A stretch of DNA of 64,000 bases from Klebsormidium nitens (GCA_000708835.1 DF237146.1:62001-126000), one strand, 5' to 3'; counted from the first letter of the stretch, positions 5,371-59,871 are shown. Numbers and translations are program-made. Notes: a model not told the origin generated them from the letters alone.

Positions 5371-8300
5371 TCAACCGAGAAGGCTCATGCAGTTGCCTTG
5401 CCAGTTGAGATCTGTGACGGCTTTTATCCTGGCGTCTGCTTTATCCAGGGCCAAAAGCATCGTGTTGAAAAAGGCTTTGACGTCCATCTTCCTAGCCACG
5501 TGCACGTTCGGCGGCCGACCGCTCTGCTTCCAAACGTCGACCACGGTTTGCCCCGCGCTCAACTGCAGCCCAGGTAAAAAGGACTCAGGAAACCAAAATC
5601 TTTTCACGGTTACAAAAGCTGCACCAAGTGTCGCCTTTGGCAGTCACTTTTCGCAAGAGTCCGCAGTCTGATCTCCTGTCGGACGTTTTCGCCGGGAGCA
5701 TGGGTTAGTTCTGATCTCGTCCTTGGGACGGCAACACACGAACGATCGACACACATTGAAGCGATGCACGTTTTCGGCTTGAGGCAGTGGGTCGACGATA
5801 AACTCGCTCCTTAACTCATTCAAAACACGACGAACGTCGATGTTGACCGGGGGACCCTTGAACAGACTTTGGAGGGACTTTTGCAGATTCCAGGGGCTTG
5901 AGGAAATTGAAACCTCGAGATTCTTGAAGACCATAGCGTTGACGGATACTACGAATGAAGCATGGCTGGCGCCTTTCTTACCTCGCTACGTGTTTCGATG
6001 TCGACTCGGAGATGGTCCACCTGCAATAGACGAACCGTTCGGTGAGCATTTTCTTGTGTCCTACCGAAAAACATTTTTCGGACCAAACCAGAAGTCCTCT
6101 GAAGAAATCACAAACGAAGCCGCAGGCGAAGCACATGAAATTGCCGTTCTCATCAAGTACTCAAACGAACGGAATCTAATCAAAGTTACCCAGACCGGTT
6201 GAGCCCACTTGCTCGGTGAGACGGTGGCCCAGTTCGACCGCATTAAGGCGCATCAAAAAATAAATGGACACACATCTGAAAGTACTTGCACAGTCTTAGA
6301 GGGCGGGTTTGAAGACGCCGCCGCTTGCAAACAAATGCACTTGGAGAATCAGTCACTACTTTCTGTATTCTTGCCCATCTCAGAGATCCGCACCGGAATA
6401 AGACGTACTTAACAGCATGTTCCAGTCCAGATGCTAACCGTGGCAGACGATATGTTTGATTCAAACGTCCAACTCCGGCGATGATTGCGATTGATGCTCT
6501 TGCCAACGAGCCATTAGACCCCCCCTCCCTGCTCCGCCATTGCAACTATGACTTGAACATTCAGCGGAGGTGACGAGCAAGAAAGACGCTTCACTTTACA
6601 TGTCGGCATTGGTAGTGGACTCGACTGGATAAAGTGACGTCACTTTTACCTTGAACATCTCGGGCTCGATGACGTAAGCGACCGCGCAAGGGTCGTGCAG
6701 GGGCGGAAACTCCTTGTTGAACACCTCGCGGTACGTCTTCTTGAAGAACTCGAGCAGGTGGCAGACTGCGAGGAGGGAACGACACGTGTTCACGGTGTGA
6801 ATTGATAATGTCAGCAGAAGCAGCTTGTTCCATTCGTCAGGAGAGGGACAGACGCCACCGAGGCAATTCCTGTTGCATTGTTTGCTTGGAAGAACTCGAG
6901 CGGGTGGCAGACTGCGAGGAGGGGTGACGAGATTCACAAAGACGTTTGCTGACGTCAGCAGAGGCCAAAGATTTTGCCAGACAGAAGATGCGAGGAGGGG
7001 CGACGCGTCATAGGTGCAAATCCAGTCATTTCGTGATATCGTGACGTCAGCAAAGGCCACATGCTGCTGTCACAAAGGAGCGGCGTAAAGCCCTAGTGCA
7101 TGTTTGAGTGCAGTGCCCCTCAGCTGAAAGGAAGTAAGAGCAGATTGCGAGGAAGAGCCAATCACGTTGCTCAGGTGACGCAAGTGATGGTGACACCTCA
7201 TTCAGCAGGAATGACGTAAGCACACGCCAACAGAAAGGGGAGATGTATGGTGTTGGAAGCTTCGGCAATTGCCTTCCGAGCATTCAAAGCAGCAGGCATC
7301 CTTTGACGTGACCAAGTGTGGCCAGGTCTCAATGGAAGTAACGGTCTAGCATACATCAAAAGAAGCCCTGTTTCAGGTGACTATGAACGTAGTGAAAGTT
7401 AAGGCCCAGTTGCTTCAAGATTTGGGGTTTACTAAAATCTTGACCCAAAAGAACACCCGCTCCGCACCCGTACCCAGCCTAAACCCCCAAGTAACCCCAC
7501 TCGTCCCGGTTACTGCACACTGCCCTTACCATTCTAAGAATCTAGCGGGATTCATTTCAGGCATGACTGCCCTAAGCCCGAAGATGGTCTAAATGGGCGA
7601 CTGAAGGCAGCAAGCCAAATGAAGGGCAGGTGGCAACAGCCAGTGCGGACAGAGTTGAGAATGGTGAGCTTACTGAATTGAAAATGGGGTCTGCATTAGC
7701 GGCAATAGAACAATCGGCATAACGCCTCCCCAACGACGAGCTCAAGGCCGACCGACGTTAGCAAAGTAGTCACTTGCTCTTGAGCGCCGGAAACAGAAAC
7801 CGTCAATGAAAGAGACTCCTGAAGTCCAAAAGCATTGGTAGGTATGGGAGTGGACGTTGGTCTCACGCGCAACCTAAGGATTTCTCGCATCTCAGGCCGG
7901 GATAGACTGCCGAGCAGTTGAGATTTGTCCGCGACTCAAGCCGGAACAAGACTGCCGAGCACTTCTACAGCTTTCCGATACACTTTGAAGTACCTTGCAT
8001 TGGGCTAGATGAGTCCCCAGGCTTTGACCGAACTCAAGATTCAAAGTAAACATGCGCCCCAGCCGTACACACTTTTATAACCGCAAACCAGACTCACCCT
8101 GCCCTTTAGCAGTGACCTACCTCCACGTGGCCGTAAACTGAATGCAAAATCGATGCTATTAGCACTCGCCCGTTGCTTGGAACAGCCATCTCCTACCTGT
8201 TGAAATCTGCTGAGGGGTTCACTCTGTTTTGCTTGAAAGACGTGTGCAATAGGAACTGAGGCGCTAGCTGCTCACTGGTTTCTCGGAAGGGTGTCGGGTT

Positions 8301-11300
8301 TGTGGTACGGATGGCGGATATGACAGCTGGCGACACGTTGGCGGTGTGCGTCACCTGCAACGTCACGTCAGCATCATACGTCAGCATCACAGTTTAGCAC
8401 GCTTTGTCCGTTCGAAGATATAGACAACAAGGTGGTACATTGTAGAAGTGAGTGTGTTGGACAAGTGTGACAAGGAGGGAAGCCACATCGAGCACAAGAT
8501 GCACCACTCAACGGTAGCTCACTTTTCAGGAACAACGGATTGCAAGAAATGACATATGTGCCCGGCGTTATTTGGTGGAGAATGCCTCTTCCTTGCAGAC
8601 ATAACGGCTTCTGCAATCCCTCTTACGGGGCCTCGTTCGTTGATGAGTTAGAGAAGAGCAGATTTCTTGCAGTCAGCGATGCTCTTTCTCGTTTCTGCAT
8701 CAACAACAGCAGCTCCGCAATCTTCCAACTCCAAAATGCAGATAGGTTCCGCAACGGATTCCCCGGCCTTACCTCCAGCGGAACCATGGTCACCGAAACC
8801 CCGGACTCGAAGACCATGCTTGCGGCTTCTGGGTCGCACTGCGAGGGACAAAAAGGCAAAGTGGGTCGTAAATTCAAAACCATAATGACCGACCATAGAT
8901 CTGGTACTGGTGGACTGGTCATGCCACTTCGCATATAGTCGTTAATTCATCCGCCTTGCTCCTGGCCTTACACCCTGACAGCCGTAAGCTGGCTTCAGCA
9001 GTCGAAGCGGAGACGAAAGTGGGAGGAGACTCAGCAAAAGCCCTCAAGATTGATACAAAAGAACTCAGAAGAAACCAAAGGTATACCTGAATGTTGAACT
9101 CCACTACGGGGCCCGTGTTCCCGATCCCCAGGCATCCCCCTGAAAAGCAAGTCAGAATATATTTTCTGTAAAGTCTGAGCGTAATTTCGTTTTGAAGAGA
9201 TTGAGAGATCTGTTAGCAGAGGAGCAGGCTCTTGAATGAGATCCTCATGAACTGTCGGTCAAAACAGTACTGGGCAGAAAGATCACGTGGCTCATTTTGG
9301 AGGAGCGAAGTCTACTTCGGAAAGAGCGCCAAGCACCTAACAAGCATTGGACCGTCAGAAAGGCACTTTCTGAGTATCAAAACACGTGGCTCGTCGCGTC
9401 ATAATCACAGATAAATCCGGAAGGTTGTAGCAAGCGAGTAGCAAGCACTGTGTCGATGCGCTTGTTCGCTCGTGTTTGCAGAAAATAAAAGTGAGTAGAA
9501 GCTCGAGCTAGATGGAATTGCACGGAAGCACCCTGGCTGCCGGCGGGGTCACTCACCCATCATCGTGATCTGCAGAAAGACACAGAGACAAATGGTCGGC
9601 GACAAAATTCCGTTTGTCTGCAAGGTACAGCTCTTTGCGTCAAACCTGCCATCAGGTTCAATGCTCCGATCTTGGTTCCTGATTTTGAACCGTTCGATCG
9701 ACGACATGGCAAGCCTTGGATGGCTCGAAAACAGGAACCCGGCTCAGGGAGTTTGGAACCGATGGCAAGTTTGACGCAAACAGCTGTAACAATCAGTCCG
9801 ATCATTCCACAAGCCATCAGCGCTTTGTACCTCGAGTTTCCGAAACCCATCACTGACAGCCCAGTGGATCCGCAGATAGTCTCTCTATTGCCCCGGATGC
9901 TCGGAACACGTCGTTTCAGTGCGGGTCGCCCCTGAGTCCTTTCGACTGCGACTGGACAGCTAGACTCGTGAAAATCTTCATGCAAGCTCCCTAAAAACCC
10001 TTCGGCGTCTGACAAGCGTCAATGCAACTGTTGCGGTCGCTGCGGTAAACGCAACTCTTTAGCCGACGTACAAGCCACCATCAATCGCCTTGGTACGCTG
10101 AAAGGTGGGCTTGGAACGCACTGGTGCCCTTGTTTAACGAAACAAGCTTGCCGATGCGAGATTCATGATCAGGCAAATTTGCAAGCTCAGTCGGTCGCAG
10201 TTGCGAATTCCTGTTTTACCAGTGCTTGTCTAGCTCCTGTTTCATTGCAGTTGCCGTTCGGCAAAGAAGTCATGCGCAAGCGTTTGCAGAAAAGCGGAAC
10301 CTTCACTAACAGTAACGATTAAAGAAAACATACCGGTTGGACCAAACCCACCTCTATCATTTCCTTGATTTCCGGGTAGACGCTGAGCAGCAGTGCAATG
10401 TTCGTCAGTGCCCCTGTCGCTACAAGGGACACCTTTTGCGAACTGCCGTCGTTCCTGCAGAGTCATCATAGGGTTCAGCGCAAATCCATTGCCGTCTTCG
10501 TCAGATCCCGCACCAGAATGTCCCGAGCTTGCTTAACGGGCTTGAAAAGGTCAAACTGTTTACAGCGATTCATTGCGAAAGGGAAGGCCAAACTCCAAAT
10601 ATCGCATCGGCCCCCGTTGCTGCAAACCTTGATTACAATGACCGAAGACATGGGCAGCCTCGCCTCGAAGCTTTTGCTTAGACGTCTTTCTTTTCGACCG
10701 AGAGGAGGACTCGGGCGAGCATTTGCGCAAAGAAGCGCAAAAAGGAAAAAGGAACATAGCTGAACATAGAACACAAGAGAGCAGGCCAGAACGTAGCCAT
10801 CTGCAAGCAGAAAGGATCGTCTCAGTGACCCACTTGAATCGCTTGCTGATGGCGTCAAACATGACGTTGACCGACTTCCCCAAAAGCGGCCGCACCGTTG
10901 GCTGCGGAAGCCTCGCCCCATCGAGCCCCGACTCCCCGTGGATCTCCGGACACGTGCGCACGGGCCGCAGGAGGGGCTTTGTCGCGCCAGGAACGACACC
11001 TGTTCACAAAAGTGGACCAGCTGAGTTGGATATTGATCTATTGTAACAGCCGCTTTCACACACTGTTCTCGCTTTGAAAGCGCCTGTCCACCCACCCGAA
11101 AGTCTTCAACTGGAAGTCGATCTCATAGTAATATTGCCGCTCTTTACACAGTAATTCTCCCTCGACCGAGAGATAGGCGCTTCTTCACTCTGGCTTCCGC
11201 ACTTGATTGGATTCTTATCGAGTAGTGGCCGCGAGCTTTATTATGAAGGTGAACGCGCTCCTTGCCTAAGCGTTTGTTTCCCTCGTTCAACTCGTTCGTT

Positions 11301-13775
11301 GATCAGCCTTTGACGTCGAACGGCTCGGCCCATGCGCGCAGACTACGCAACGCGCTATTCTGAGAGAACAATCAGCTGTTTAAAAGGCGTCACGAGTTGA
11401 CGAACGTTAGGATCAGTACTGACTCTGCGCTCAAGGAGTCGCTTGCAACTGACACAATTGCCCCATGAAAGCTCTTCATATTGAGGTAGCGTGCTTCTTA
11501 TGTCGAACAGAAGCACGTTCGGAGGGGTCATATGAACGCCCGAGCCCTGGGTGTCGAATCTAAAAGCATGGACATCAACCTATGTTCGATCCAGTACGAG
11601 ACCAAGAAAGAATCATCCCTCAGGTCAATCGTTTGTGCTTCGATTTCATCCAAAGAGCAGTCATCTCTTGAACAGGCGACCCCAGCCCCTGAACACAAAT
11701 TGCCTTAACGAATTCAGAGGTCCCCGTATACAGATCTTACTGGAGCAGACAGCTTGGCTTCGAAGCGATGAATGCAAAAGGCGTCACGTTCGACAAGGAA
11801 GCAACAGCAGAAGGGAACGAGTCAACAACAGATGCGAAAGCACACGTCGTTTTCAGCGGAACAAACAAAGTTTCGAACATTCAGCCCTCTCACGGGTTTG
11901 AGTATCGCACGAAGCATACCTATGTCTTCTCGGTGTATCAACGCTAATATGCGCTGGGCGTTCTCAGTGACCTTTTCAAGGGACTGGTTGCTGGCGACCG
12001 TGCTGATTCCAAGCAGATCGAGGCTGTGTGTGAATGCGGCCAGGATTATGGCCATCGCGTCGTCGTGCCCTGCACAAGAGCAAGTTCACACTCACTGGTC
12101 TAGTAGAGAGCTGGCCAGGTCCCAACAGGGTGTGAATATGGCCATGATAGGTGCAAGAAACTTTATGCGCAGCGGCGAGATATGAGTTTTACTGAACCGA
12201 GCTTGAAAGCAAACGGTCAAACTGGTTATACTAGAAATGACTTGTTGGTGCACCCTTACACATGGATTCAGAGGAGGCAGAGAAGATGCTGTGAGCAGAC
12301 GGAAGCTCATATCTCACTACAGGCAGACCTAAAGCACAGAACGTGGACGCATGCTCCCATGAGAGGCCCAAGGAGGAGAGCAAAAGGTATATTGAGATTT
12401 CTAAGTTCAGTGATCAGGATTGAGGGACTCCTAGAAAGTCGTGTTTCAGCGACAAAATAGAACCTGCACTGGCGCCCCTAAGAAACGTCCTAAAACCATT
12501 CACTCTTTAACGTTCTGAGAATTAGACACAGCTTGCCTTGTCGTTACTAAGCATCTTAAGGCTCATTTCGTACCATTCAAATGTAATCAGATAAGACCGT
12601 TTAAAGATCAGAATCTCCTCCCGAGGCCATGCAGGTTTGGGGGCGTCGCTTTCCTTCCAACTTTCCCAACTATGCTTTGGTTTCCTACCTGGGTCACAGT
12701 CCAGCCACACCGCCTTCTTCTGCTGTACCGGCTCCCCCCTCAGTAACCAATCGATCGCACTCGCCGGCTGCGCGATCCGCACCTCCGCCGCTGTCCTCAG
12801 CGCGAGCCGCTTATCTTTCCCCTCCCTCTGCGCCGCCACCTCCTTGCAGTGCTCGCAGTCCCGGCAGTAGTTCTTCAGGTCTTCCACCTGTGTCTTCCAC
12901 CAGAACCGGTCGACAATGCGCTGACGTGTTACGAAATGACTCGGGTGACCCCCCTCGTCGTGCACCGACTTGAGCACTTGGACTCGCTGCGCCGAACTTA
13001 ACACCAAAAGCTTAACCACCGCCTGTTGCCCCTCCTCGTTCAGCTTTCGCTTTACCTGCCGGTAGCGGATCAGCCGCCCCCCCTGGACGTCGAAGATCGC
13101 CGCCTTATCTCGGATGTTCCGCCGCTTATCCTTCCGCTGCGCCACCGATAACTCCTTAAACTCAGGCAAGTTATTGAACAATAAAAAGTCCACTACTTCC
13201 TTGTCAGCCAGCAACTCCTCAGGGGGGGGCGCAGGGAACCTCTCGAAATCCGCCTCAGTCAGAAGAAACTTATCTACCGCAGCAGCCCCGCCCTCGTCCT
13301 CCTGCCGTTCTGGGGGGGCTTCTAAATCCGGGTTACTATTCAGGTTTGGGTTTGGGTTTGGGGTTGGTGACCCGCCCCGCGCTGCAGCCGCCGGCGTCTC
13401 CTCCACCCCATCCCGCAAAAACCGCAGACGTTCATACCTGGTGCCTCGGGGCAATTCCCCTGAAGGGGGGTCACTTGCAGCGTTCCCTTCCTGAGGCCGG
13501 GGGGGTGTTGCAGCAGCCCTAGCTGTGCCCCCCCCTCCAGCTGCCGCCCTGGCTGGCCCCCCCTCGGCTGCTGTTCTCGTGCTCTCTCTCAGACGTTCCT
13601 GCGCTTGCTGTAGCTGCAAAAGAAGGGCCTGACGTTCCGCAGACGGCGGAGGGGGCAGCCGTGCAAATTCAGAGGGGTGGGGGAGCTCTTCTAGGTTTGG
13701 AGCGGCGGTCGATCTGAGCCGTTGGCTGCTCCTCGGAGGGGCTAGAAAGCCGTCCATTTGCGTTCCAGCCTCCAT
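5371..13775 (-). CDS. Inosine/uridine-preferring nucleoside hydrolase with a long N-terminal extension containing an integrase H2C2 zinc-binding domain (predicted 687 aa, 11 exons)
   Basis: Exons 13775-12689, 12069-11920, 10999-10834, 10454-10352, 9569-9557, 9139-9087, 8838-8773, 8354-8276, 6765-6650, 6020-5982 and 5562-5371. All introns are GT-AG and the total of 2064 nt is in frame. IU-NH motifs: WLDCDPGHDDAMAIILAA, EIHGESGLDG, VATGALTNIA, MGG...GN...EFNIQCDPEAA, PPLHDPCAVAY, SAGQTVVD. The start codon (ATG 13775 or 13757) is uncertain. Confidence 0.9.
6745..7160 (-). repeat. Four serial, progressively degenerate copies of a 3' splice-site module
   Basis: AGAACTCGAGC(A/G)GGTGGCAGACTGCGAGGAGG at 6745-6776 (true acceptor) and 6891-6922. 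Weaker GA(T/TT)GCGAGGA copies lie at about 6987 and 7143. Most copies have a (C/G)TGAC branch-point-like motif upstream on the minus strand. Confidence 0.75.
12843..13200 (-). mobile_element. Ty3/Gypsy-like integrase N-terminal (H2C2) domain relic embedded in exon 1 of the nucleoside hydrolase
   Basis: Translation EVVDFLLFNNLP...KRRNIRDKAAIFDVQGGRL...LLVLSSAQRVQVLKSVHDEGGHPSHFVTRQRIVDRFWWKTQVEDLKNYCRDCEHCK fits the H-x4-H...W...D...Y-x2-C-x2-C pattern of the integrase zinc-binding family (PF17921-type). No DDE core, RT or LTR is seen nearby. Confidence 0.8.
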
Positions 13776-14484
13776 GGAATAGTTCTGAGGAGGTATCTCT
13801 CCCAAGTCAGTAAGAGGTCTTGCCTTCAGTGCATTGGATGCATTCTCTCTTCTCCAAATGAAACAAAGTCAGGCAGCTACCATAGAATGCAGGAGAATGT
13901 TGGGGCTGTGTTTGCCAGACGGAACGTGTAGGGCTCATATGCCGGCTTCACAACTCAATGTGCTCTTGAAATTGACTCGAAGATGTAAACAGTACAGAGA
14001 ATATCAGCGAGCGCCAGAGAATTTTAGCTAGAAAGCCTGCAAATCAAGCATCCGAGTTCAAGCCTCCATGAAACAGTTTCTACATACACTCAGAAACCAA
14101 AACTTTTGAAGGACTGTAGTTTTCCGCAGAATGCCTTTCCAACCACACGATAGGAACATTCACAGACTTTCAACGGTTCGTATCAGTAGTCCGAAGAAAC
14201 TTACGAATTAAGCGAGAAAGAACCAGCCTAGTTGCAGATGCAGCCCGCCTTTCTTTTCAAACAACCAGGCTTGCATGAATTTTGAACAGGCCTGTTTTGG
14301 AGCATGCTGGCAGCCGCCTTCTTCCTCCTCTCATTGGTAGAACAATCTTCTGCGGACCTGCGTGTCTGGACCTCGAGCTGCAGGCACCTCGAGTCAGCTG
14401 TGGCTTCGTTAGGTGATCCATCTCATAGACGGCAGATGCATGTGAGGCAGCTGCAGTTTCCATCTGCAAGCATTGTCTGCCAAC

Positions 14485-17400
14485 ATGGAGAGTCGACCGC
14501 GGCGCGAGATCAAACTGCCTGCAAAGTTCAAAGAGGAGGAAGGAGCAGCACTGGGGAAGAAGAAAGCTTCAAAGGATGCCGAAGACGAGCCCGTGGTCTA
14601 CTGCATATGCAGGAAGCCATACAAGGAAGGGGACTTCATGATCCATTGTGATAAATGCAAGGAATGGTTCCATGGGAATTGCGTGAAGGTCACTCAAAGG
14701 GTAAGTTGACAAAGAGCTTGTTTGAGGTAGTGTGTTGTGTGTTAAGTGGCCGGACTCAATGTGCAGGCAATGAATGGTTATGGAAGATCTTCTAGAGGTT
14801 ACATCACTAACAGCACATCGGACAAAGCACTCTGTCGTATCAATGCATCAGCTCTTCCTACTCCATCAATTGTTAGAACAGTTTTACCAGCTCTTTTTGG
14901 GTCACTGCCTTCTAATTGCTGATTTTTCCTTCTTACCTCTTATTGCCAATAGATTCATGCAGATTGGTAAAACGAGCAAAATTGCTCGTGAATTTTCTGG
15001 AAAACTTTTGTCAAGTAATGCATGTTGCACTTTTGCTTCTTCTGCTGTTTACCCCCCCTTTGTTTTGATGCTCACTCAGGCAAAGCATCGCTGGTTGACA
15101 CAAACATATACTGACATTTTAGCCCTCATTTAGTTGGCCAGAAGATCAGTATTTGTATGCATGATCTTGCTTATGAACTGACCTGCCTCTAAAGGTAAAT
15201 GCACAGGGGCTGCAAAAGCAGATCAACAAGATAATGAAACAGCCCGGCCTGCAATGCATCCGGAAAGAAGCGCAAAGCTGTCTGTCTATAATCATGCACT
15301 TTTGAGAGAGGAAGTTCCAGCATTACCTTCACTGGGTCTCTTATCAAGTTGCCATCCTGTTTTTACCACAAAGCTACACCTTGCTTCAGATGATTCTGAC
15401 TGATCGGTGATTACGGACACACCTTCTTGACAAAATGCATTCATTCCGTCTCTAAGATGTACAATGAAGCTTCCTTCTTATAGGCAGAAAGGTAATGGAA
15501 GAATGCTGTTGCAGGATTGGTCATAATGTTTGGAGCTACACCTAATGCACCTAGTGAAGCCTACTGATCATCTGTCCTTTCAATCAGAACTGCCGGTATT
15601 AAGATTTGAGCAGTGGCGCCATCCATCTTATTGAAACTGGTTGGAAGGATGTCCCATGTGGAATATTTTTTATGCAGGAGGCGGCCAAAATAAAGAAGTA
15701 TGTATGCCCGACGTGTTCCAAGGAGGAGACCCCTGCAGGTAAAGCTGCAATTCTCCATCCTTTTGTGCATGGTGTAGCCTAGCTTTTGAAGATTGCAGTT
15801 GGTCCAATCTAGGAAATTTCAGATTCAGCAAACTCTCTTCGCAATCTTGTGATGTGGCGATTAACTGGCTGCATGGCTTGATGCTTGCGCCTCAGCAAGA
15901 GCAATGCACAGCATAAAGGTGAAGAGGTACAATTCCATAAACACCACGCTTGCTTGGTATAAGGCTTGCTAGCAGAACACCAGGCAAAGATGGGGAGAAC
16001 CTGAGTCCTCATGTTCATTTGTGTTCATTCTGGGAATCACTTCCTTGCTTGGTCACATCAGCACCGATTCCTTCAATCAGACGGAGAGAGGGGAAGCACC
16101 TTAGCTTTCCGTTCAAGGGCGCTTAACAACAAAACCCTAAACCCCTGGATTTTTGAAGACACCACGTTCGCGCATGCAGTGGTTCCTTTGGCCTTGGAGG
16201 AACCGTCCAAGATCCCCAAGAAACATCGATCATTGGAAACTGCCAAGGGGGATAAAGCGCAACCAGCGGCTGCAGCCAAGGCTGAGGAAGCCAAGCCATC
16301 AAAAGCACCTGCGGGTACGAAGTCGTCTGGGGCGGAGTCAAAAACTTCCAAAGCTGCAGAGGCGGCCAAAGAAACAATGGCAGTGAAGCCGAACGAGAAG
16401 ACCGGGAATGGCACGGAACCAAAGGAAAAGGGGAAAACTGCAAAGCGAAAGGTGCCACAGGGCGCTGCCAAGGGGGCAGAGAAGGCGGAGAACAAGGAGC
16501 AGGGGGCGGAGAAAGTCAAGGGGGAGGACAAGGAGCAGGAGAGTAAAGAAGAGAAGGAGGAAAAAGAGGGGCAGGAGGGGAAAGAGGCAACAGAGGGGAA
16601 GGAGCGGAAGGAGGGGGCAGCCCCAGTGAAGGCAAGGCCGAAGAAAGAAGACCTCGTGTGCAGTGCGTGCAGAAACGTGAGTCAACATGCTTCTACCTCT
16701 GCCCCAGCAATCCAGATACCTCCTTGTTATCTCGCCTCCTGCTTTATCGTAATGCGCCGTTCGTTACTTCCTGACTAGGATTATTCGAAGATGCTTACAA
16801 ATAAGTGGCGCTGGAACTTGGTATGATTAGTCAGCTTCGTCTTTCCACATTTGAGATAGGCCCCTGATGACATGCTTTGGTTCACAACTTGGGGCGCCTA
16901 GATCGGGTTTGTGTCATTTTCAATGGCTCAGTTTATGGTATTATTGGATTGCTCGACAATGGGAGTGCATGACACTAACTTTTCAGACGGTTTCGGGCTT
17001 GTGTGCTCAAGTTGTCTCAATGCAGGCAACCAGGTCGACTCGACCGCTTCAGCTGATAGTGTTTAGTTTGCTGTTACTGCTGTTCCAGACCTCAATTTCT
17101 GGAACAGTCTCAAAAGCTTGCGTATTTAGCCTTTGCTGGATGGTGGATTTATAAACGTTCCCTCACATCTCCATACTGCAGAAGGGCCACATCCGGACGC
17201 ATCGGGAGTGCCCCCTGTTCGGACAGCTGCCAAGCCCCTCAAATGGCAAGAAGGCCGGAAGCGCTGTTGCAGCTGATCAGAAGCCTGCTGGCGGAGGTGC
17301 CCCCAAAAGTGAAAAGCACAAGGAGGTCGTAGTGCCCAGCGATGAGGACGAGCCAATCCTGGCACGAAAGAAACCGGCACCGTCACCAAAGGTGAGAAAG

Positions 17401-20400
17401 AGCTGACGCCTCTACTCCATTCTGGCGCGTCATCCAAAGTGATGCAGCTTGCCTTAAAGCAACGGCTTCTGACCTTGTTGCAGAAGGATGTGTTCAATTT
17501 TTCAACGGAGGAAAATTCATATGTCCATGCTCTGACAACTGATGTTGGCTAAGCATTGGGCCAGGGTTGATTCATCATATCTCGGTCTTTTGAATCTCAA
17601 TATTTGCATGCTTCCCTCCCCTGTGCTTTTCAATTCATGAAATTTGTAGGGCAAGAGTTCCGGGTGGACTGTCAAGACTTTGTTCTGCTTGCAAAAGTCT
17701 GGACCTCTAGAAACTATCACAAAACACACTGTCCAAGATTGACGCGCTGTTCTTACAAGGGGCGCCGATCATCATTGATTTTGTAAGAGTCTCTACTCAG
17801 TGCCCCGGAAATTGTGAAATCTATCGCAGCCTCAATTGACGCATTGTTCCACATGTAAAGTCACCGCTTCATGTGGCTACAGGTTGCTGTGGACGCCTAC
17901 CAATCAAATAAGTCAGATTAAGAATGCTCCAAATACAAGCTTTGCAACAGATTGTACTGCGCTTTATATTCATATGACCGACGTCTGTCTCACTCAGGCG
18001 CCTTCTACAAGCGCCGCCCCCCCAGCTTCTGCGCCTGCCACGAAGGATGATCCCCCCGCCACAGACGACGACGATCATGCACATATGCTGCATCCCGTCA
18101 ACACGAGCAGCCACTTTGACACTGGAGCAGCGCTCCTGGTCGCACCAGACAAACCGCCCGCAACCCTGGAGGCGGAAAAGACCGCGCCAGCGGAGGCAAA
18201 GGCCAAAGCCCCCAGTGCAAAACCGCAGGTGAGGAGCCGGCTGGCACTTTGCTTTACGCAATGGATAGATTGTGTTGCAAGCAAACTGGAAGTGCCATGC
18301 TTGGAGGTACTAGGAAGTCTCACGCTGCTCCCAATCAAATCCAAGTAATGGATGGTTTGCCCATCAAATTGTTAAAACGATTGGATCTTCTTGTCTCCAG
18401 CTTGGTTTGCACAGCCAGCCCCTAGCCAAGTAGACAGAGATCATCTGTAACGGCTTGGTCAACTGCTCAATAAAATCGAGCAGTAAGGATGCAAACATTG
18501 GAAATTCTTCCAAAAGGTACCGTGACTGCTTATAGAAGGGTATATAGACGAGTAAGGAAGCCAGACAAGAAGATTATCAAGCCTTTCCTAGCTCCTTCCT
18601 TCTGACAACTTCAGCCGTTGAACCGCATAAGGTAGAAGCAGTCCCGCATGTCGACTCCCCTCCTCTCCTCTCTGCAGAAGCGGAAGCAGCCTCTCTGACG
18701 AGGGGCTGCGCAGGGAGGCACTGTAGAGTAGAAGACAAGCCGTTCGCCCTGTAGGTCTAGTTCTGTAGAATAATTGCCAGCTGGGGGCATTTTCCATTTC
18801 CTAGGGGACAGCTTTAAGTAAGCAACGAGGTAATAAGGTCAACAAGGGCCACTTTATTAAGGGCCGCCAGGAGCCCCGTCATGAAACAGGCCGAAATCTA
18901 AAATCGATCTTGTACGTGTAGGCGGCTCTTTCGGGGGAGAAAAGAAAGATGGAGGTGGGCTTAGAAGGGGCGGAAAGGGCCTCGTCGGATGCCAAGAAGG
19001 CCCGTCCGCTGATCCCACCCCTGGAGGCGGCGTCCAAGCATAGCAGGCAAGGTGTGGCAGAGCCCCGGACCGTAAAAACGCCCGAGTCGGCTCCGTCGGG
19101 TCCCGTTCCGGAGACCCCTAGGACGCCCAAGTCTCCAGCTAGACAGCCAGGCCCTGAGAGTCCAAGGAGAGCGCATGAGGGAGCGCAGGGTGCAGGGGCG
19201 GTTGTGCTCGGGCCGCCAAAGATCGAGCCGCCGAAGAGCGAGAAGAAAGAACAGCCTCCTTCGGTGGGCAGGCAGGAGAGCAGCAAAGGGGCGAAGCGGG
19301 GTTGGGAGGAGATGGAGGGTAAAGCCGGGGGAGTGAAGAAGGGGGGGTTTGATCAGGCTCATGCGGACTATAAAGCGAGAATGGCGTTCAGGAACTCTCT
19401 GGCGGGTGCTCTAGCTACAGACGCGAAGGAAGGGGGTGCGGGACCCCAGCCTCCGACGCCGAAACGTGGGGGCGACGGAAGCCAAGCGGGGACCCCAAAG
19501 CCAGGCAACGCTGCAGAAACGCAGCGTGAAACAGAGGGCATGGCGGGGCTGGCAGAAACGAGCGGGGTTGCAAAGGCGGATCACGTAGAGGGCCCTGGTA
19601 GGGAGGGGAGCGGGGTAAAGAACGAAGGCACCAGCGGGGGCGTCAACAAAAGCGACGGTGGATCCGGTCTGGCTGTGCTGGCCGCAGGCGGTGAGGTCTC
19701 AGCCCTAGGGGTCCCTGGAGCTGGAGCGATGGAGAAAGCCCCGCTAAGCGAGCCCCCTGGCAAAGCGGAAGAGGGAGACGGATCAAAACCTGAGAGCACG
19801 GAAATGGGGACCGGTCCAGGGACAGAAAAGGCGGCTGGTCTGCAAAGCGTAGGTGCGGCAGCTTTGGGCGGGCCTTCGGGCGAGCACACCCTAGGGAAAT
19901 TCAAGCCGGATCTGGGAGGGCAAATCGAGGGGCCAACAGCGGCTACTGAAGATGTCACAGACAAGAGCGGTGCGGCCGCTCTAGATGAGGCGAGCCTTTT
20001 GCGGCTGGCGGAGGAGGTGGCGGGGGAGATTGAGGCGGCGCTCTATGCGCACTTTGGGGGAACTGGAAACCCGTACCGCCAGCAGACCCGCATGCTGGTC
20101 TTCAATCTGAAGAACAACCCGGAGCTCCGGTCGAGGGTGCTGGCGAAAGAGGTCGCGCCAAAGCAGCTGTGCACGGCGACTTCAGACGAGGTGCGTTGAC
20201 CGCCCGTTTCTTTGCAGGATCGTATGTTTTTCGTTTTTGAACCATCCAAGCGGATCGGGTCTTACCCAAGCAATCCTTCAAGTCGTGTTTGGGATCAGTT
20301 TTGAGATGAGTGTCCTGCTGTGATCGTTGCTCACAATTCAACTCTCTTTTCTTTTCTGCTTTCGATCACTATACTCGAGAAGGCCACGTACAAAGATGCC

Positions 20401-23400
20401 GGCCTTCAATGATCTTGCTTTGAAATCAAGAACAGCTGCTGTGTATGGACTCCGCGCTGCGAAAGTTCGCACAGAGATGTCGGCGCCAGAGGCATGGCGC
20501 AGAAGAGTGAACAGGTTTGAAAGCGTCATTCAACGAACGGGAAAAGTTGTTGCGTGTGTAAAGACCACTCCAAGCCCCAACGTGCTGCAGAAGGTAGTCT
20601 TTGCACCTCGCTATACTTGAATAGACTTGTGAAGACAACAACTTAAAATATGCAGAATGTCTTGTCTCGATTCTCCAAGTTCAAGCAAAGCAGTATGTCA
20701 GATAGATGGGCTCAAGAGGCCTCACGGATGTGGAACTCCTGCAGTTCTGGCCGTCGAGACCAATCAGGAACGAAACGAGCGGCCACGGAGATAAATTGGC
20801 TCCTCGCATTCACAATTCACTTCTCGCTGCCAGCTGGCGCGTAAGGAGCTGTCGGACTGGCGCCACGCCAAGGAGGAGGCGCTTTCGGCGCTCAAGGTGC
20901 TGACGGAAGACCCGCTGGAGGCGCTGCGGCGCGTTCGCAAGAAGACCCACAAGGGCGAAGAGGACGTCGAGATGGACAAGGACAGGATGGCCGCAGCGAT
21001 CATGGAGGGTGACAAGGAGGCGCACGAAGTGGGGGAGAAAGAGGAGGCGGGAGGGAGAGATGCGGAAATGGAGGAGCCAGGTAGGATTTGCAGGTGTACA
21101 TTTGCGATATCCCGCTGCGTATGTTGTTGTGGTTGTTTGCTTGGTCTTGACTTGTAAAGAAGTTTGCCACCTTTCTGTTGCATGGAGAAAGTACGATGAC
21201 CAGGAGTCAGCAAGTATGTCTGAGCAATTGCCCCGAACAGAGCAACGATTGTCTAAAAGTGGCAACGTTTGCCAGAAGGAGCGTCTTAGCTGGAAACTTC
21301 GCCAATTGTCCAGCGGATTCGCGGTCCAGCTTTGTTCATCTCTGTTCCACGAGCAGTTCCTTGAGACGCGCATCTCCATGCCTAAAATGCGCTGTGGGCT
21401 TAACATAATCAGATTGTCTTGATATATCGACATATATCGCTGATTTAGCTTGATGGTGTACAACAGAAGGCGACACATAATTCTAGCAATTCTTTTCTGA
21501 CGACCTGTTGGCAGACAAGTCAGTGCAGTCCGTAAGTCAAAGCAGAGAATCACATCAGGGAACAATATGGTTTCTCTGCTTTGAGCATATTCGCTCACTT
21601 CGCTTCCACCTCTTCATCAGGTGGGGAAGAAGACGCAAAGGAGCCGCTAAAGCGCCAAAGATCCGCAGAGGGACCTACCAGGACATCAGCTGACGTTTTG
21701 GGCCAAAAGACTGGGGAGGCTTCCAACGACGGGAAACCGAAGATGAGCACAGAACCAGCTTCGTCTGGGACAGGTGGAGCCGTCAAAGAGGAACACGTCT
21801 CAGCACCGGGGCCGGCAGCTGCTTCGGACCAAGAGCAGAGTGCGGGTGCAGAAGGCGGCCCTACGGGGGAAGGGGGGCTCTCGCTTGAGGAGTATCTGGA
21901 GGCGTGCATGACCGCCGGGGGGGGGTCCGATCAGGGCAGCGAGGACGGGGGGGACGAGAAGATGGGCGAATGGGTTGCTAGCGAGGACGAGGAAGAGAAG
22001 GTGGAAGCGACAGTGAAAGAGGAGAACGTTGCGGCGGGGGGGGAGGAAGATGATAAGGGCATGGACGACTTTCTGTGGGAGGGCAACCTGATGCTTAGCG
22101 GGCGGGCGTGCCCCACGATCGCGTCGTTTGTGGGGGGGGAGCGTATGCAGATCGAGACGTGGCCGATGACCGTGGAGGTTAAGGGGCGGGTTAAGATGGC
22201 AGACTTCCGCGCGTTCATGACGAGCCCGCAGCTGTACAAGCACCGCGTCGTGATGGTCATCGGGCTCAAGTACCTGGAGGAAGCGCACGACTCCAAGAAC
22301 CATCTCGCGATCGCGAGCCAGAACTACCTCGAGGCGAACCGTGTCGGGTACGCGGAACCCGTGGCCAATCTGGAGGTCTACATCGCCCCCCCCAGAGCGG
22401 AGGGCCTCGCCGCCTTTCTCCCTTTGAAAGGAGAATGGGGGGAGTCGGGCGAGCTCTTAGCCGTGGTGGTCAAGCGCCGGTTCCCGCCTGAAGGCCCCCC
22501 CGGTTCGGAACCCCCCGCCCAGACTCAGCAGCGGCAGTCAGGGGGGCCTGCCCCTCAGGGGACTCAACCGAGGGGCCAACCGGCCGCACAGGCTGGAGGG
22601 GAGGACGTTTGGTCACCCCCGACCTCTCCGTTTGACAATCCCGGCGGACCGAAGGGCCCTCAGGCGTGGCCCACTAAGAAAGCGGAGCAGGGGCAAGGGG
22701 GAGGCTCGGGTCCGGCGGAGGCGGCGCCGATGGAACAGGATCAAGTGAGCAAGGCGATGGAGAATTGTGCAGCCCTACTTTTCCTTTTGACTTTTGGGTG
22801 GGTCATTAGTGCGGTGTTGTTTTCGAACTCTTAACATGGTGGATTGGTCTTTGGTGATTCTTTGGTGGTGTGGTACTCTGCCAAGAATGGCGCAGACTTT
22901 AATTCTGGGTCTGCCTAGGATGGCGCAGATCTGAAAAGTGGGTCTGTCTGCTGATGACCGCAGGCGAGTCGAGCATCCAATCTGGAAACTGTGACTGGTC
23001 GTTTGGAACCCGGAGGAGACTGCCCTTCACGTGGGACTAGCTTCTGACTGCAGATGGACTGTGCGTCCCTAGTTGTCGACTGAACTGAGATCTCCTGTGG
23101 CTGTTACGACCACTGGTGCAGAACCTGCGTGATAAGCCCATTTTTGGGTGCTTTGCTGCTCACCACAAATGCTCAAATTGAACGACCGCCGCTCCGTCTC
23201 AATTCATGCAGGCATCAATGCAGCGCAAGAGACGGGACCCCCGCCTGCGCGTCTTCCAGCCCCCCGCTTCCTCCCCCTCCCNNNNNNNNNNNNNNNNNNN
23301 NNNNNNNNNNNNNNNNNNNNNNNNNNNNNNNNNNNNNNNNNNNNNNNNNNNNNNNNNNNNNNNNNNNNNNNNNNNNNNNNNNNNNNNNNNNNNNNNNNNN

Positions 23401-58944: not shown

Positions 58945-59871
58945 ATGGAAGATCTTCCCAGCGACTTACTTTTGATCGTCCTTCGCAAGCTAGCGGCTCA
59001 GGACCCCATCTCTTTGCTGCGGGCCACGTGCGCCTGCAAGCTGATTCTTCGGGTGACTGAGGAGAACCCAATCGTCTGGAAGGAAGCGTTTCTTGGGTCG
59101 GCGCCCACTGAACAAAACACGGGCGGTCTTGATGCTTACGTCACGTGTGCTGAGCTGGATGAGCGGGTGGATCGGCTGGGAGGGTATAAGCAGCTAGCGC
59201 TGATCAAAGCAGGTCGTCAGGGATTGTCCAATTCAAAAGTGGGGTCTGCTCTTCAAGAAAGCATCAGCAGCAAATTAGATGCCGACTTCGAGAGCAACCT
59301 TTTCCGGTTTCTGGCTGTCTTTAGACAGCGAGGCCATCTTCTTTGGGCTGCCGGTTACACTGAGAAGCCAAAGTCACTCACCGACTATTTAGCCTTTGTT
59401 CAGCTACCAGAGAAAGGCGACGGTAATTCTGGTGGAGCCTGTAGAATTCAAACTTTGAGTGTTCTCGACCTTGTCCCAGTCTACTTACCTGCTTCATGCA
59501 ACAAGCTGGCAGCAAATCGGTCAGCAGGTACACGAAGAGGCATAAACGCGGAAGGAGAGAGTCTGGAAGATTTCAAGAATGGGAAGATTAACGTAGAGGT
59601 CTTTATATCGCTAAACAGAGGTTCCGTCCATCCGAGCAAGGTTTTCTCGCAAAGCTTCAGGCCTTGGCCATGGGATAGCAGAATTCTCATCGACCGCGAC
59701 GCCTCTACCAAATCTGTGGCAGTAGCCGAAGCACAGGGGTTCTTCATCTTCGAAGACCCTGACCGACTTCAAAATGACTGGCTGTTCAAGTTTACAGTAA
59801 TGATTGCGGCGGCTGGGATCCTTGGCAAGGCGCTACAGCATATGCGGGGGTGGATCTTGGGACATCCGTAA
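58945..59871 (+). CDS. F-box-like family member 8, intronless, 308 aa, intact, with a hydrophobic C-terminal segment
   Basis: MEDLPSDLLLIVLRKLAAQDPISLLRATCACK...VWKEAFLG...LGGYKQL...FLAVFRQRGHLLWAAG...GKINVEVF...WLFKFTVMIAAAGILGKAL. Confidence 0.8.
   Translation: MEDLPSDLLLIVLRKLAAQDPISLLRATCACKLILRVTEENPIVWKEAFLGSAPTEQNTGGLDAYVTCAELDERVDRLGGYKQLALIKAGRQGLSNSKVGSALQESISSKLDADFESNLFRFLAVFRQRGHLLWAAGYTEKPKSLTDYLAFVQLPEKGDGNSGGACRIQTLSVLDLVPVYLPASCNKLAANRSAGTRRGINAEGESLEDFKNGKINVEVFISLNRGSVHPSKVFSQSFRPWPWDSRILIDRDASTKSVAVAEAQGFFIFEDPDRLQNDWLFKFTVMIAAAGILGKALQHMRGWILGHP

What the first reader, a model, noticed from the sequence alone, without database searches (positions are those of the whole stretch)
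5371..13775. Retroelement integrase H2C2 zinc domain fused in frame to a nucleoside hydrolase
Seen: exon 1 reads without a break from a Pro/Ala/Gly-rich region through a complete integrase-type zinc domain (H-D-E-G-G-H...FWW...D...YCRDCEHC) into KKAVWLDCDPG, the first catalytic motif of an IU nucleoside hydrolase. That motif is completed across the intron as DCDPGHDD. The DNA just upstream of AVWLD is purine-rich with no polypyrimidine tract, so a hidden intron there is unlikely. Established: this domain normally precedes the DDE core of Ty3/Gypsy and Ginger integrases, and the IU-NHs I know start near the DxDxxxDD motif. Inference: the integrase core was replaced by a salvage enzyme, giving a domesticated chimera in which the zinc domain may oligomerise or target the hydrolase. 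I know of no described example of this architecture.
Basis: partly seen in the sequence, partly recalled or inferred. Interest (0 to 1): 0.82.

Follow-up and report, generated by a model that had tools for sequence, protein, structure and literature searches.

The report
Retroelement integrase head fused to hydrolase
In the alga Klebsormidium nitens, a normal-looking nucleoside-splitting enzyme carries the non-catalytic front end of a jumping-gene integrase at its start; the fusion is transcribed as one spliced mRNA, is kept in related algae and is under selection, but what the added part does is untested.

Summary
The window is from Klebsormidium nitens. An 11-exon minus-strand gene (CDS 13775..5371) exactly encodes a public protein (P0001, 681 aa from the second ATG). 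P0001 has Pfam Integrase_H2C2 (E 1e-13) ahead of a full-length IU_nuc_hydro domain (E 5e-96).

Spliced transcript contigs from four studies run unbroken through exon 1, from at least 14029 to 12689. They join to exon 2 at the GT..AG intron that completes DCDPG|HDD. No splice enters upstream of KKAVWLD, and there is no in-frame ATG after codon 17.

The captured piece is larger than the zinc domain. It is the two-domain integrase head, NED plus HHCC NTD (Ty3 integrase Z 9.5; foamy-virus integrase Z 8.2-8.6). Its nearest relatives are Ty3/gypsy integrases found in the same metagenome as an orthologue of the fusion. No RT, RNase H or rve remnant lies in the 64 kb.

The same exon-1 layout occurs in at least two diverged relatives. 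dN/dS is 0.05-0.12 for the module against 0.11 for the enzyme exons. Of 553 long nucleoside hydrolases found, the 120 best are listed, and only P0001 among them carries the module.

Function is inferred only: an active hydrolase with a tethering or self-association module. It is a lineage-restricted variant of transposon-domain exaptation.

The parts
13776..14040 (-). 5' UTR of exon 1. The transcript contigs of three runs end at 14029-14046 and one reaches 14248. It holds short uORFs with ATGs at 13938, 13883, 13843 and 13834.
13254..13775 (-). Coding start (ATG 13775; second ATG 13757) and a low-complexity Pro/Ala/Gly-rich N-terminal region. It has indels between orthologues and weaker constraint (omega 0.19-0.38).
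12996..13253 (-). N-terminal extension domain (NED) of a Ty3/gypsy-type integrase: helices followed by a small beta-sheet. omega is 0.07-0.09.
12834..12992 (-). HHCC zinc-binding N-terminal domain (Pfam Integrase_H2C2). Ligand codons: H 12960-12962, H 12945-12947, C 12855-12857, C 12846-12848.
12720..12833 (-). 38-aa linker, predicted largely helical and conserved among the fusion orthologues. It has no detectable homology to integrase or to the hydrolase.
12689..12719 (-). First strand of the nucleoside hydrolase (KKAVWLDCDPG) at the end of exon 1. The first half of the DxDxxxDD motif lies here.
12070..12688 (-). Intron 1 (GT..AG), spliced out in the transcript contigs of all four runs laid.
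11920..12069 (-). Exon 2. It completes the motif as ...GHDD (IU_nuc_hydro profile positions 8-66).
10834..10999 (-). Exon 3 (HGESGLDG region).
10352..10454 (-). Exon 4.
9557..9569 (-). 13-nt microexon (codes ITMM). It appears in the transcript contigs as 12 letters lying between the 10352 and 9140 sides of a joint.
9087..9139 (-). Exon 6.
8773..8838 (-). Exon 7 (EFNI..DPEAA region).
8276..8354 (-). Exon 8.
6650..6765 (-). Exon 9 (PLHDP, the catalytic His-Asp region).
5982..6020 (-). Exon 10.
5371..5562 (-). Exon 11 with the stop codon (5371-5373).

Best explanation
This is a genuine, expressed, conserved chimeric gene of Klebsormidium nitens and its close relatives.

Shown:
- Architecture, N to C: a disordered head of about 170 aa, then the non-catalytic N-terminal two-domain unit (NED plus HHCC zinc-binding NTD) of a Ty3/gypsy integrase, then a 38-aa helical linker, then a complete IU/RihA-type nucleoside hydrolase.
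- The whole is translated as one polypeptide, because the only in-frame ATGs lie upstream of the integrase piece.
- The integrase catalytic core is absent.
- The module is under purifying selection as strong as that on the enzyme.

Inferred:
- Origin: a fragment of a resident gypsy element became part of the first exon of a vertically inherited green-algal hydrolase gene. This happened in the Klebsormidium lineage.
- Working: the hydrolase domain keeps every motif of active enzymes and splits ribonucleosides. The NED-NTD acts as a non-catalytic interaction module. It would either tether the enzyme to a partner (protein or nucleic acid) or promote self-association, as these domains do in integrases.
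For: Transcription as one unit:
- Spliced contigs from four runs in four studies are continuous over 12688..14029-14248.
- They are joined 12688|12068, 11918|10997, 10833|10453 and onward, all GT..AG on the minus strand.
- The frame stays open across the joints.
- The only in-frame ATGs are codons 11 and 17 of the ORF.

Domains:
- P0001 has Integrase_H2C2 at 256-308, E 1e-13.
- P0001 has IU_nuc_hydro at 350-651, covering profile positions 1-297 of 297, E 4.6e-96.
- Against RihA (4wr2, E 9e-72) the motifs DCDPGHDDA, HGESGLDG, EFNI.DPEAA and PLHDPC are identical.

Module identity:
- hhalign against gypsy integrases gives E 7e-30 and 38% identity over 139 columns, ending just after CxxC.
- The AF2 model has pLDDT 84.
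- Structural matches: Ty3 integrase Z 9.5 (rmsd 1.8 A over 84 aa); foamy-virus integrase NED+NTD Z 8.2-8.6; MoMLV NED-NTD Z 6.7; the next unrelated hit has Z 3.4.
- The HHCC residues are invariant or nearly so across 43 sequences.

Source:
- The nearest relatives (P0123, E 1e-20; P0277) sit in elements with the order gag-RT-RNaseH-spacer-H2C2.
- They come from the same JGI sample as the orthologue L004.

Not a resident transposon copy:
- Transposon proteins hit only 12843-13304 in the whole 64-kb window.
- The neighbour is a PHD-TFIIS-SPOC gene.

Conservation:
- L003 (94% aa) and L001/L002/L004 (74% aa) all end exon 1 at AVWLDCDPG|gt, and hydrolase exons follow.

Selection (dN/dS):
- Module: 0.053 at dS 0.47, and 0.12 at dS about 1.5.
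- Hydrolase exons: 0.106.

Late addition:
- Exon 1 has about 1.09 kb of intron-free coding sequence at GC about 0.58.
- The hydrolase part is in ten exons of 13-192 nt at GC about 0.50.

Precedents for an interaction role (literature):
- The Ty3 NED binds TFIIIC subunit Tfc1, and the DGLT-A NED binds Tfc4 (PMC6101501).
- The MoMLV NED-NTD crystallised as a dimer with zinc held by HHCC (PMC11054761).
Against: - No experiment or prediction here shows what the module binds. The homodimer prediction gave no verdict.
- Contig-level RNA data cannot exclude a minor internal transcription start or a non-AUG start that would make a hydrolase-only product.
- There is no protein-level evidence.
- dS against the more distant relative is saturated, so that omega is approximate.
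- The relatives are unnamed (SRA and metagenome contigs), so the age of the fusion is not dated.
- The upstream neighbour is not shared with L004, so orthology rests on gene structure and identity, not synteny.
Confidence: 0.8

Rival explanations
1. The integrase piece is a neutral, recently exonised transposon fragment. It rides on the hydrolase without contributing any function.
For: - It derives from a Ty3/gypsy element.
- No function has been demonstrated.
- The distribution is lineage-restricted.
Against: - omega is 0.05-0.12 over 193 codons, equal to the enzyme's 0.11.
- HHCC and about 130 of 193 residues are invariant across five orthologue sequences despite saturated synonymous divergence.
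- The module models as a confident fold.
Confidence: 0.07
2. The long ORF is transcribed, but the working enzyme is a hydrolase-only product. It would be made from an internal transcription start or a non-AUG start just upstream of KKAVWLD, so the integrase-like part would act mainly as a leader.
For: - Assembled contigs cannot show minor starts.
- The 5' UTR carries several uORFs, which suggests translational control.
Against: - There is no in-frame ATG between codon 17 and the hydrolase motif.
- Strong amino-acid-level constraint on the module is not expected of a non-coding leader.
- No alternative joints or separate contig ends appear inside exon 1 in any of the four runs.
Confidence: 0.08
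3. The fusion is an assembly or annotation artefact that joins a transposon remnant to a neighbouring gene.
For: None was found. This was the null hypothesis to be excluded.
Against: - The same continuous exon 1 occurs in transcript assemblies from four studies.
- It also occurs in independent genomic contigs from three other samples.
- No difference from the window was listed in the transcript contigs (tables 3-4).
Confidence: 0.01
4. The module is a defence device against the alga's own gypsy elements. It would bind the integrase or pre-integration complex of those elements, acting as a decoy or as a tether that brings the hydrolase to them.
For: - The nearest relatives are integrases of gypsy elements co-resident in the lineage.
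- NTDs act in trans within intasomes (established knowledge of retroviral intasome structures such as PFV 3l2q, which the model matches).
Against: - Identity to the known resident integrases is only 31-39%.
- A ribonucleoside hydrolase has no evident anti-retroelement chemistry.
- Nothing here tested this idea.
Confidence: 0.04

Closest known systems
Ty3/gypsy and spuma/gamma-retroviral integrase N-terminal region (NED + HHCC NTD; Ty3 intasome 7q5b, PFV intasome 3l2q, MoMLV 3nnq)
   Same: - The same two-domain fold: Z 9.5, 8.2-8.6 and 6.7 respectively.
- The same HHCC spacing, and a Pfam PF17921 match above the cut-off.
- Profile-level homology to gypsy integrases, E 7e-30.
   Different: - No catalytic core (rve) and no C-terminal domain follow.
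- No RT, RNase H, gag or LTR lies nearby.
- The downstream domain is a metabolic hydrolase.
- The gene has introns, orthologues and host-gene-like constraint.
IU-preferring / RihA-type nucleoside hydrolases (Pfam PF01156), including green-algal homologues (Nannochloris, Scenedesmus, Chlorokybus)
   Same: - Full-length domain with identical calcium-binding and catalytic motifs.
- 50-60% identity to green-algal enzymes.
   Different: - It carries an N-terminal extension of about 350 aa that includes the integrase NED-NTD.
- None of the other 119 long homologues listed has PF17921.
Domesticated gypsy-integrase genes of animals (GIN1, NYNRIN, KRBA2 and SCAN-domain proteins with integrase remnants). 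This comparison is from my own knowledge and is not tested here beyond the SCAN and C2H2 partners seen.
   Same: A host gene retaining part of a Ty3/gypsy integrase under selection.
   Different: - Those genes keep the rve core or pair the remnant with transcription-factor domains.
- Here only NED-NTD is kept, and it is joined to a small-molecule enzyme.

Membership tests
Integrase_H2C2 / integrase HHCC N-terminal domain | Match to the family HMM above the curated cut-off | tested here: met
   52 bits against a cut-off of 25.5, E 7e-14. On P0001 the E-value is 1e-13.
Integrase_H2C2 / integrase HHCC N-terminal domain | His-His-Cys-Cys zinc ligands with canonical spacing | tested here: met
   H-x4-H-x29-C-x2-C. 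The residues are invariant or nearly so in the 43-sequence alignment. Zinc binding itself was not measured.
Integrase_H2C2 / integrase HHCC N-terminal domain | Three-helix NTD fold preceded by a NED, as in Ty3 and PFV integrases | tested here: met
   AF2 pLDDT 84. 7q5b_A Z 9.5 and PFV Z 8.2-8.6 over model residues 14-142.
Functional retroelement integrase / LTR retrotransposon | DDE catalytic core (rve) after the NTD | tested here: not met
   No rve hit on P0001. The hhalign match stops after CxxC. tblastn with gypsy pol proteins finds nothing else in the 64 kb.
Functional retroelement integrase / LTR retrotransposon | Adjacent gag, RT and RNase H | tested here: not met
   One search found none. 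The flanking genes are host genes. LTRs were not looked for.
IU nucleoside hydrolase (PF01156) | Full-length HMM match | tested here: met
   Profile positions 1-297 of 297, 322 bits, E 4.6e-96.
IU nucleoside hydrolase (PF01156) | N-terminal DxDxxxDD calcium-binding motif and the catalytic Asn and His-Asp | tested here: met
   DCDPGHDD is completed across intron 1. EFNI and LHDP are identical to RihA in the alignment.
IU nucleoside hydrolase (PF01156) | Nucleoside hydrolase activity and substrate preference | not testable with these tools
   Needs an enzyme assay.
Domesticated (exapted) transposon-derived coding sequence | Orthologues in other genomes with the same gene structure | tested here: met
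   L003, L001/L002 and L004 share the exon-1 end at DCDPG|gt, with hydrolase exons downstream.
Domesticated (exapted) transposon-derived coding sequence | Purifying selection on the transposon-derived part | tested here: met
   omega 0.053 and 0.12, against 0.106 for the enzyme exons.
Domesticated (exapted) transposon-derived coding sequence | Expression as part of the host mRNA | tested here: met
   Spliced contigs in four runs from four studies.
Domesticated (exapted) transposon-derived coding sequence | Conserved synteny | tested here: not met
   The PHD-TFIIS-SPOC neighbour of the window is not found within 10 kb upstream in L004. Only one relative was tested, so this weighs little.
Domesticated (exapted) transposon-derived coding sequence | Demonstrated host function of the derived domain | not testable with these tools
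   Needs deletion or mutation, localisation and interaction experiments.

The most novel reading that the evidence does not exclude
The NED-NTD is an addressing device taken from a retroelement. It would deliver a small-molecule salvage enzyme to a specific partner, either chromatin or transcription machinery (as the Ty3 and DGLT-A NEDs bind TFIIIC subunits) or the alga's own gypsy integration complexes. That would be a kind of transposon-domain exaptation, targeting of a metabolic enzyme, for which I found no described precedent.
Probability: 0.15. Interest if true: 0.75.

Novelty: new variant of a known kind. Interest (0 to 1): 0.55.

Why it matters
Exaptation of transposon proteins is well known for DNA-handling functions such as transcription factors, recombinases and centromere proteins. 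Here the non-catalytic head of an integrase is kept, under selection as strong as that on the enzyme, on a nucleoside-salvage hydrolase.

The case is clean and experimentally tractable for asking what an isolated NED-NTD module can do for a host protein:
- the mRNA is confirmed;
- orthologues are in hand;
- the likely source family of elements sits in the same lineage;
- the host is, to my knowledge, a culturable alga used as a laboratory model.

It also shows how an intron-free retroelement fragment can become the first exon of an old, intron-rich gene.

Its reach is limited. It is known only from the Klebsormidium lineage, and no function is shown.

Tried and rejected
**Tried without result**
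- Complex prediction of two copies of the module (residues 1-170 of A1) gave 'no answer', score 0.00, and the controls were not run. This is evidence neither for nor against self-association.
- A MAFFT alignment placed the fusion's IDWLL/LDLL under the integrases' GFDLL, which holds the first DDE Asp. That suggested the captured piece might run into the first strand of the core. Neither hhalign nor tblastn extends past CxxC, so I do not claim it.
- Literature searches found no description of the fusion: Klebsormidium + nucleoside hydrolase; nucleoside hydrolase + integrase + domain fusion; Integrase_H2C2 + domesticated.
- A search for the SRA run numbers of the relatives, to name them, found nothing.
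- The metagenome scan with the orthologue alignment found only two distant (27%) loci and no further fusion.
- The Rfam scan of the window found no family.
- Earlier findings by place gave nothing.
- Synteny with L004 was not found.

**Considered and rejected**
- Horizontal transfer of the hydrolase, because bacterial RihA is the best solved match. The nearest sequences are green-algal at 50-60% identity.
- A Ginger DNA transposon as the source. The nearest relatives have gag, RT and RNase H.

- I sent no hand-joined spliced protein to any search tool. Exons were searched by reference. For the whole protein I used the database record P0001, which the exon model reproduces exactly.
- Exons were joined only inside local scripts, to check frame and to compute dN/dS.


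Full report
**1. What is in the sequence**

On the minus strand, the ORF window:12522-13805 (427 aa) has no stop. It reads, in order:
- a Pro/Ala/Gly-rich region;
- a segment with HDEGGH ... FWW ... CRDCEHC;
- about 40 residues later, KKAVWLDCDPG.

Pfam places Integrase_H2C2 at residues 272-324 (E 7e-14, 52 bits, cut-off 25.5). The ligand spacing is H-x4-H-x29-C-x2-C.

The ORF leaves the gene at a GT donor directly after DCDPG. An AG acceptor 619 nt downstream resumes with HDDAMAIIL, which completes the DxDxxxDD motif. Further minus-strand ORF pieces match consecutive parts of the IU_nuc_hydro profile.

The only in-frame ATGs in the ORF are codons 11 and 17 (13775 and 13757). Any AUG-initiated product that contains the hydrolase motif must therefore contain the integrase-like part.

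**2. Identity of the genome and of the protein**

A word-index search with the integrase-like region returned a 100% match. It is P0001, 681 aa, 'inosine-uridine preferring nucleoside hydrolase family protein [Klebsormidium nitens]', with PF01156 and PF17921 precomputed.

A script found an exact 11-exon, all GT-AG model (13757..5371) that reproduces P0001 residue for residue. It includes a 13-nt microexon at 9557-9569.

On P0001, Pfam gives:

| Domain | Residues | Profile coverage | E-value |
|---|---|---|---|
| Integrase_H2C2 | 256-308 | - | 1e-13 |
| IU_nuc_hydro | 350-651 | 1-297 of 297 | 4.6e-96 |

. So the architecture already sits in public databases, but only as an automatic annotation. 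Three literature searches found no paper describing it.

**3. Is it one mRNA?**

The look-up of sequencing runs listed 20 runs from 7 studies that hold the stretch. Many hold the same 0.59 share of its words, which is close to the exonic fraction.

In each run one contig runs unbroken from 14029-14248 down to 12688. It then continues across these joints:
- 12688|12068
- 11918|10997
- 10833|10453
- 10352|(12 letters)|9140
- 9087|8838

Except for the one carrying the 12 letters, each is a CT..AC skip on the plus strand, which is GT..AG on the minus strand.

Because the contigs are spliced they derive from RNA, although the runs' records do not say so. No joint enters exon 1, and none lies at 12720-12760. 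No letter differences from the window were listed.

The limit is that contigs cannot show minor transcription starts or RNA levels.

**4. What the integrase-like piece is**

*Sequence relatives.* An exhaustive HMMER search of the 193-aa module against 1.84 billion representatives found 246 hits at E <= 1e-3:
- two strong ones, P0002 and P0003, which are orthologues of the fusion;
- a small group at E 1e-20 to 1e-10 (P0123, P0124, P0125, P0127, P0129);
- then ordinary retroelement polyproteins.

The small group are integrases with H2C2 followed by a weak rve core. They lie in elements with a Ty3/gypsy order:
- L005 has RVT_1 and RT_RNaseH, then H2C2 and rve.
- L006 has gag-like, RVT_1, RT_RNaseH, a spacer, then H2C2.

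P0123 and P0277 come from the same JGI sample (3300060284) as an orthologue of the fusion gene. The source family therefore plausibly lives in the same algal lineage.

*Extent of the homology.* Profile-profile comparison of the fusion orthologues with these integrases gives E 7e-30 and 38% identity over 139 columns. The match runs from about 90 residues before the zinc domain to just after CxxC, and stops there.

*Fold.* The AlphaFold2 model of the module has mean pLDDT 84. It consists of helices, a small beta-sheet, a three-helix bundle and a long helix. Structural comparison gives:

| Solved structure | Z | Detail |
|---|---|---|
| Ty3 integrase in its intasome (7q5b_A) | 9.5 | rmsd 1.8 A over 84 aa |
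| Foamy-virus integrase | 8.2-8.6 | model 14-142 on chain 8-100, i.e. NED plus NTD |
| MoMLV NED-NTD (3nnq) | 6.7 | - |
| Next, unrelated | 3.4 | - |

The ESM Atlas searches agree.

*Conclusion.* The captured unit is the whole non-catalytic integrase head, NED plus HHCC NTD, not the zinc domain alone. The 38 residues between CxxC and the hydrolase have no detectable origin.

**5. It is not a resident transposon copy**

tblastn of gypsy gag-pol and integrase proteins against the 64-kb window hits only 12843-13304. There is no rve on P0001. The divergent upstream neighbour is a PHD-TFIIS_M-SPOC gene.

Exon 1 carries about 1.09 kb of intron-free coding sequence at GC about 0.58. The hydrolase part is cut into ten exons of 13-192 nt at GC about 0.50. 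That contrast fits a late addition from intron-free retroelement DNA. This is an inference.

**6. Conservation and selection**

The orthologue-bearing contigs are:
- L003 (SRR23617307), 94% aa identity;
- L001/L002 (SRR14092360/59) and L004 (a 35-kb contig of JGI 3300060284), 74% aa identity.

All keep the same exon 1, ending ...AVWLDCDPG|gt. L001 and L004 carry the hydrolase exons downstream, at least seven in L004.

Nei-Gojobori estimates:

| Region compared | Codons | dS | dN/dS |
|---|---|---|---|
| Module, against L003 | 193 | 0.47 | 0.053 |
| Module, against L001 | 193 | about 1.5 (saturated) | 0.12 |
| Low-complexity N-terminus | 175 (L003) / 91 (L001) | 0.51 / about 2.0 | 0.19-0.38 |
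| Hydrolase exons, against L004 | 198 | 1.14 | 0.106 |

The module is thus constrained like the enzyme. The relatives are unnamed, and synteny with the window's upstream neighbour was not found in L004.

**7. How unusual it is**

I searched the hydrolase part among proteins of 375-1190 aa, the range that would hold fusions. This returned 553 hits at E <= 1e-20. Among the best 120 listed, only P0001 carries PF17921.

The nearest hydrolases are green-algal (Nannochloris 60%, Scenedesmus 58%, Chlorokybus 51%). The enzyme is therefore vertically inherited, not a bacterial import, although RihA is the best solved match.

Conversely, I scanned 49 mid-length hits to the module with Pfam. Their partner domains are only transposon domains (rve, RNase H, RT, zinc knuckle, chromo, SH3_Tf2-1), or SCAN and C2H2. 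A metagenome scan found no further fusion locus.

**8. How it probably works**

Shown:
- one mRNA;
- one reading frame;
- an intact-looking enzyme, with DCDPGHDDA, HGESGLDG, EFNI.DPEAA and PLHDPC identical to RihA;
- an intact-looking, selected NED-NTD with no catalytic core.

Inferred: the hydrolase splits ribonucleosides as its relatives do. The NED-NTD serves as an interaction module. The precedents are:
- the Ty3 NED binds TFIIIC subunit Tfc1;
- the Dictyostelium DGLT-A NED binds Tfc4 (both from PMC6101501);
- the MoMLV NED-NTD crystallised as a zinc-bound dimer (PMC11054761).

Whether it tethers the enzyme, assembles it, or engages the alga's own gypsy complexes is open. My single complex prediction gave no verdict and counts for nothing.

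**9. Verdict**

- The finding is a new variant of a known kind, transposon-domain exaptation by gene fusion. It is lineage-restricted and its function is untested.

Earlier scan notes only added context. They say that this genome holds gypsy families with unusual inserts ahead of the integrase. I did not test those claims.

Noticed in passing
window 9557-9569 (minus strand): A 13-nt microexon (coding ITMM) inside the hydrolase gene. It is confirmed by the 12 extra letters carried between the 10352 and 9140 sides of a joint in the transcript contigs of all four runs.
   Followed up: yes
window 13776-14040 (minus strand): The 5' UTR covered by the transcript contigs holds four upstream ATGs (13938, 13883, 13843, 13834). 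One opens a 43-codon uORF. This may mean translational control.
   Followed up: partly
window 9111-10381: Low-depth contigs cover the long intron between exons 4 and 6, which could be unspliced RNA. In two runs (X5, X6) there are a non-canonical 100-nt skip (9658->9759) and loose ends at 9626 and 9788 reading a CATCAATA-type short repeat. This suggests a strain difference or repeat-length polymorphism in that intron.
   Followed up: no
window 14473-22834 (plus strand): The divergent upstream neighbour is a multi-exon gene with PHD finger (14473-14709), TFIIS central domain (18949-20199) and SPOC domain (21581-22834) pieces. This is a PHF3/DIDO-like architecture.
   Followed up: partly
L004:2700-3600 (minus strand): Upstream of the orthologous fusion gene in the metagenome contig lie degenerate, frame-broken copies of hydrolase exon-2-like sequence (GHDDALAIILAAF..., STVASNQ, ENAQRILALI). 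This looks like a small duplicated pseudo-fragment.
   Followed up: partly
L006:2766-9305 and L007:1891-4065 (JGI sample 3300060284): The gypsy elements nearest to the module have a long spacer between RNase H and the integrase head: about 280 aa in L006 and about 550 aa in P0277 (L007). The spacer has no Pfam match.
   Followed up: no
P0126 (541 aa, source not looked up): A protein with C2H2 zinc fingers followed by two to three tandem copies of the NED-like plus H2C2 unit and no rve core. This is another core-less use of the integrase head.
   Followed up: no
window 58945-59871 (plus strand): An ORF with a weak F-box-like match (E 1.6e-4, below Pfam's cut-off).
   Followed up: no
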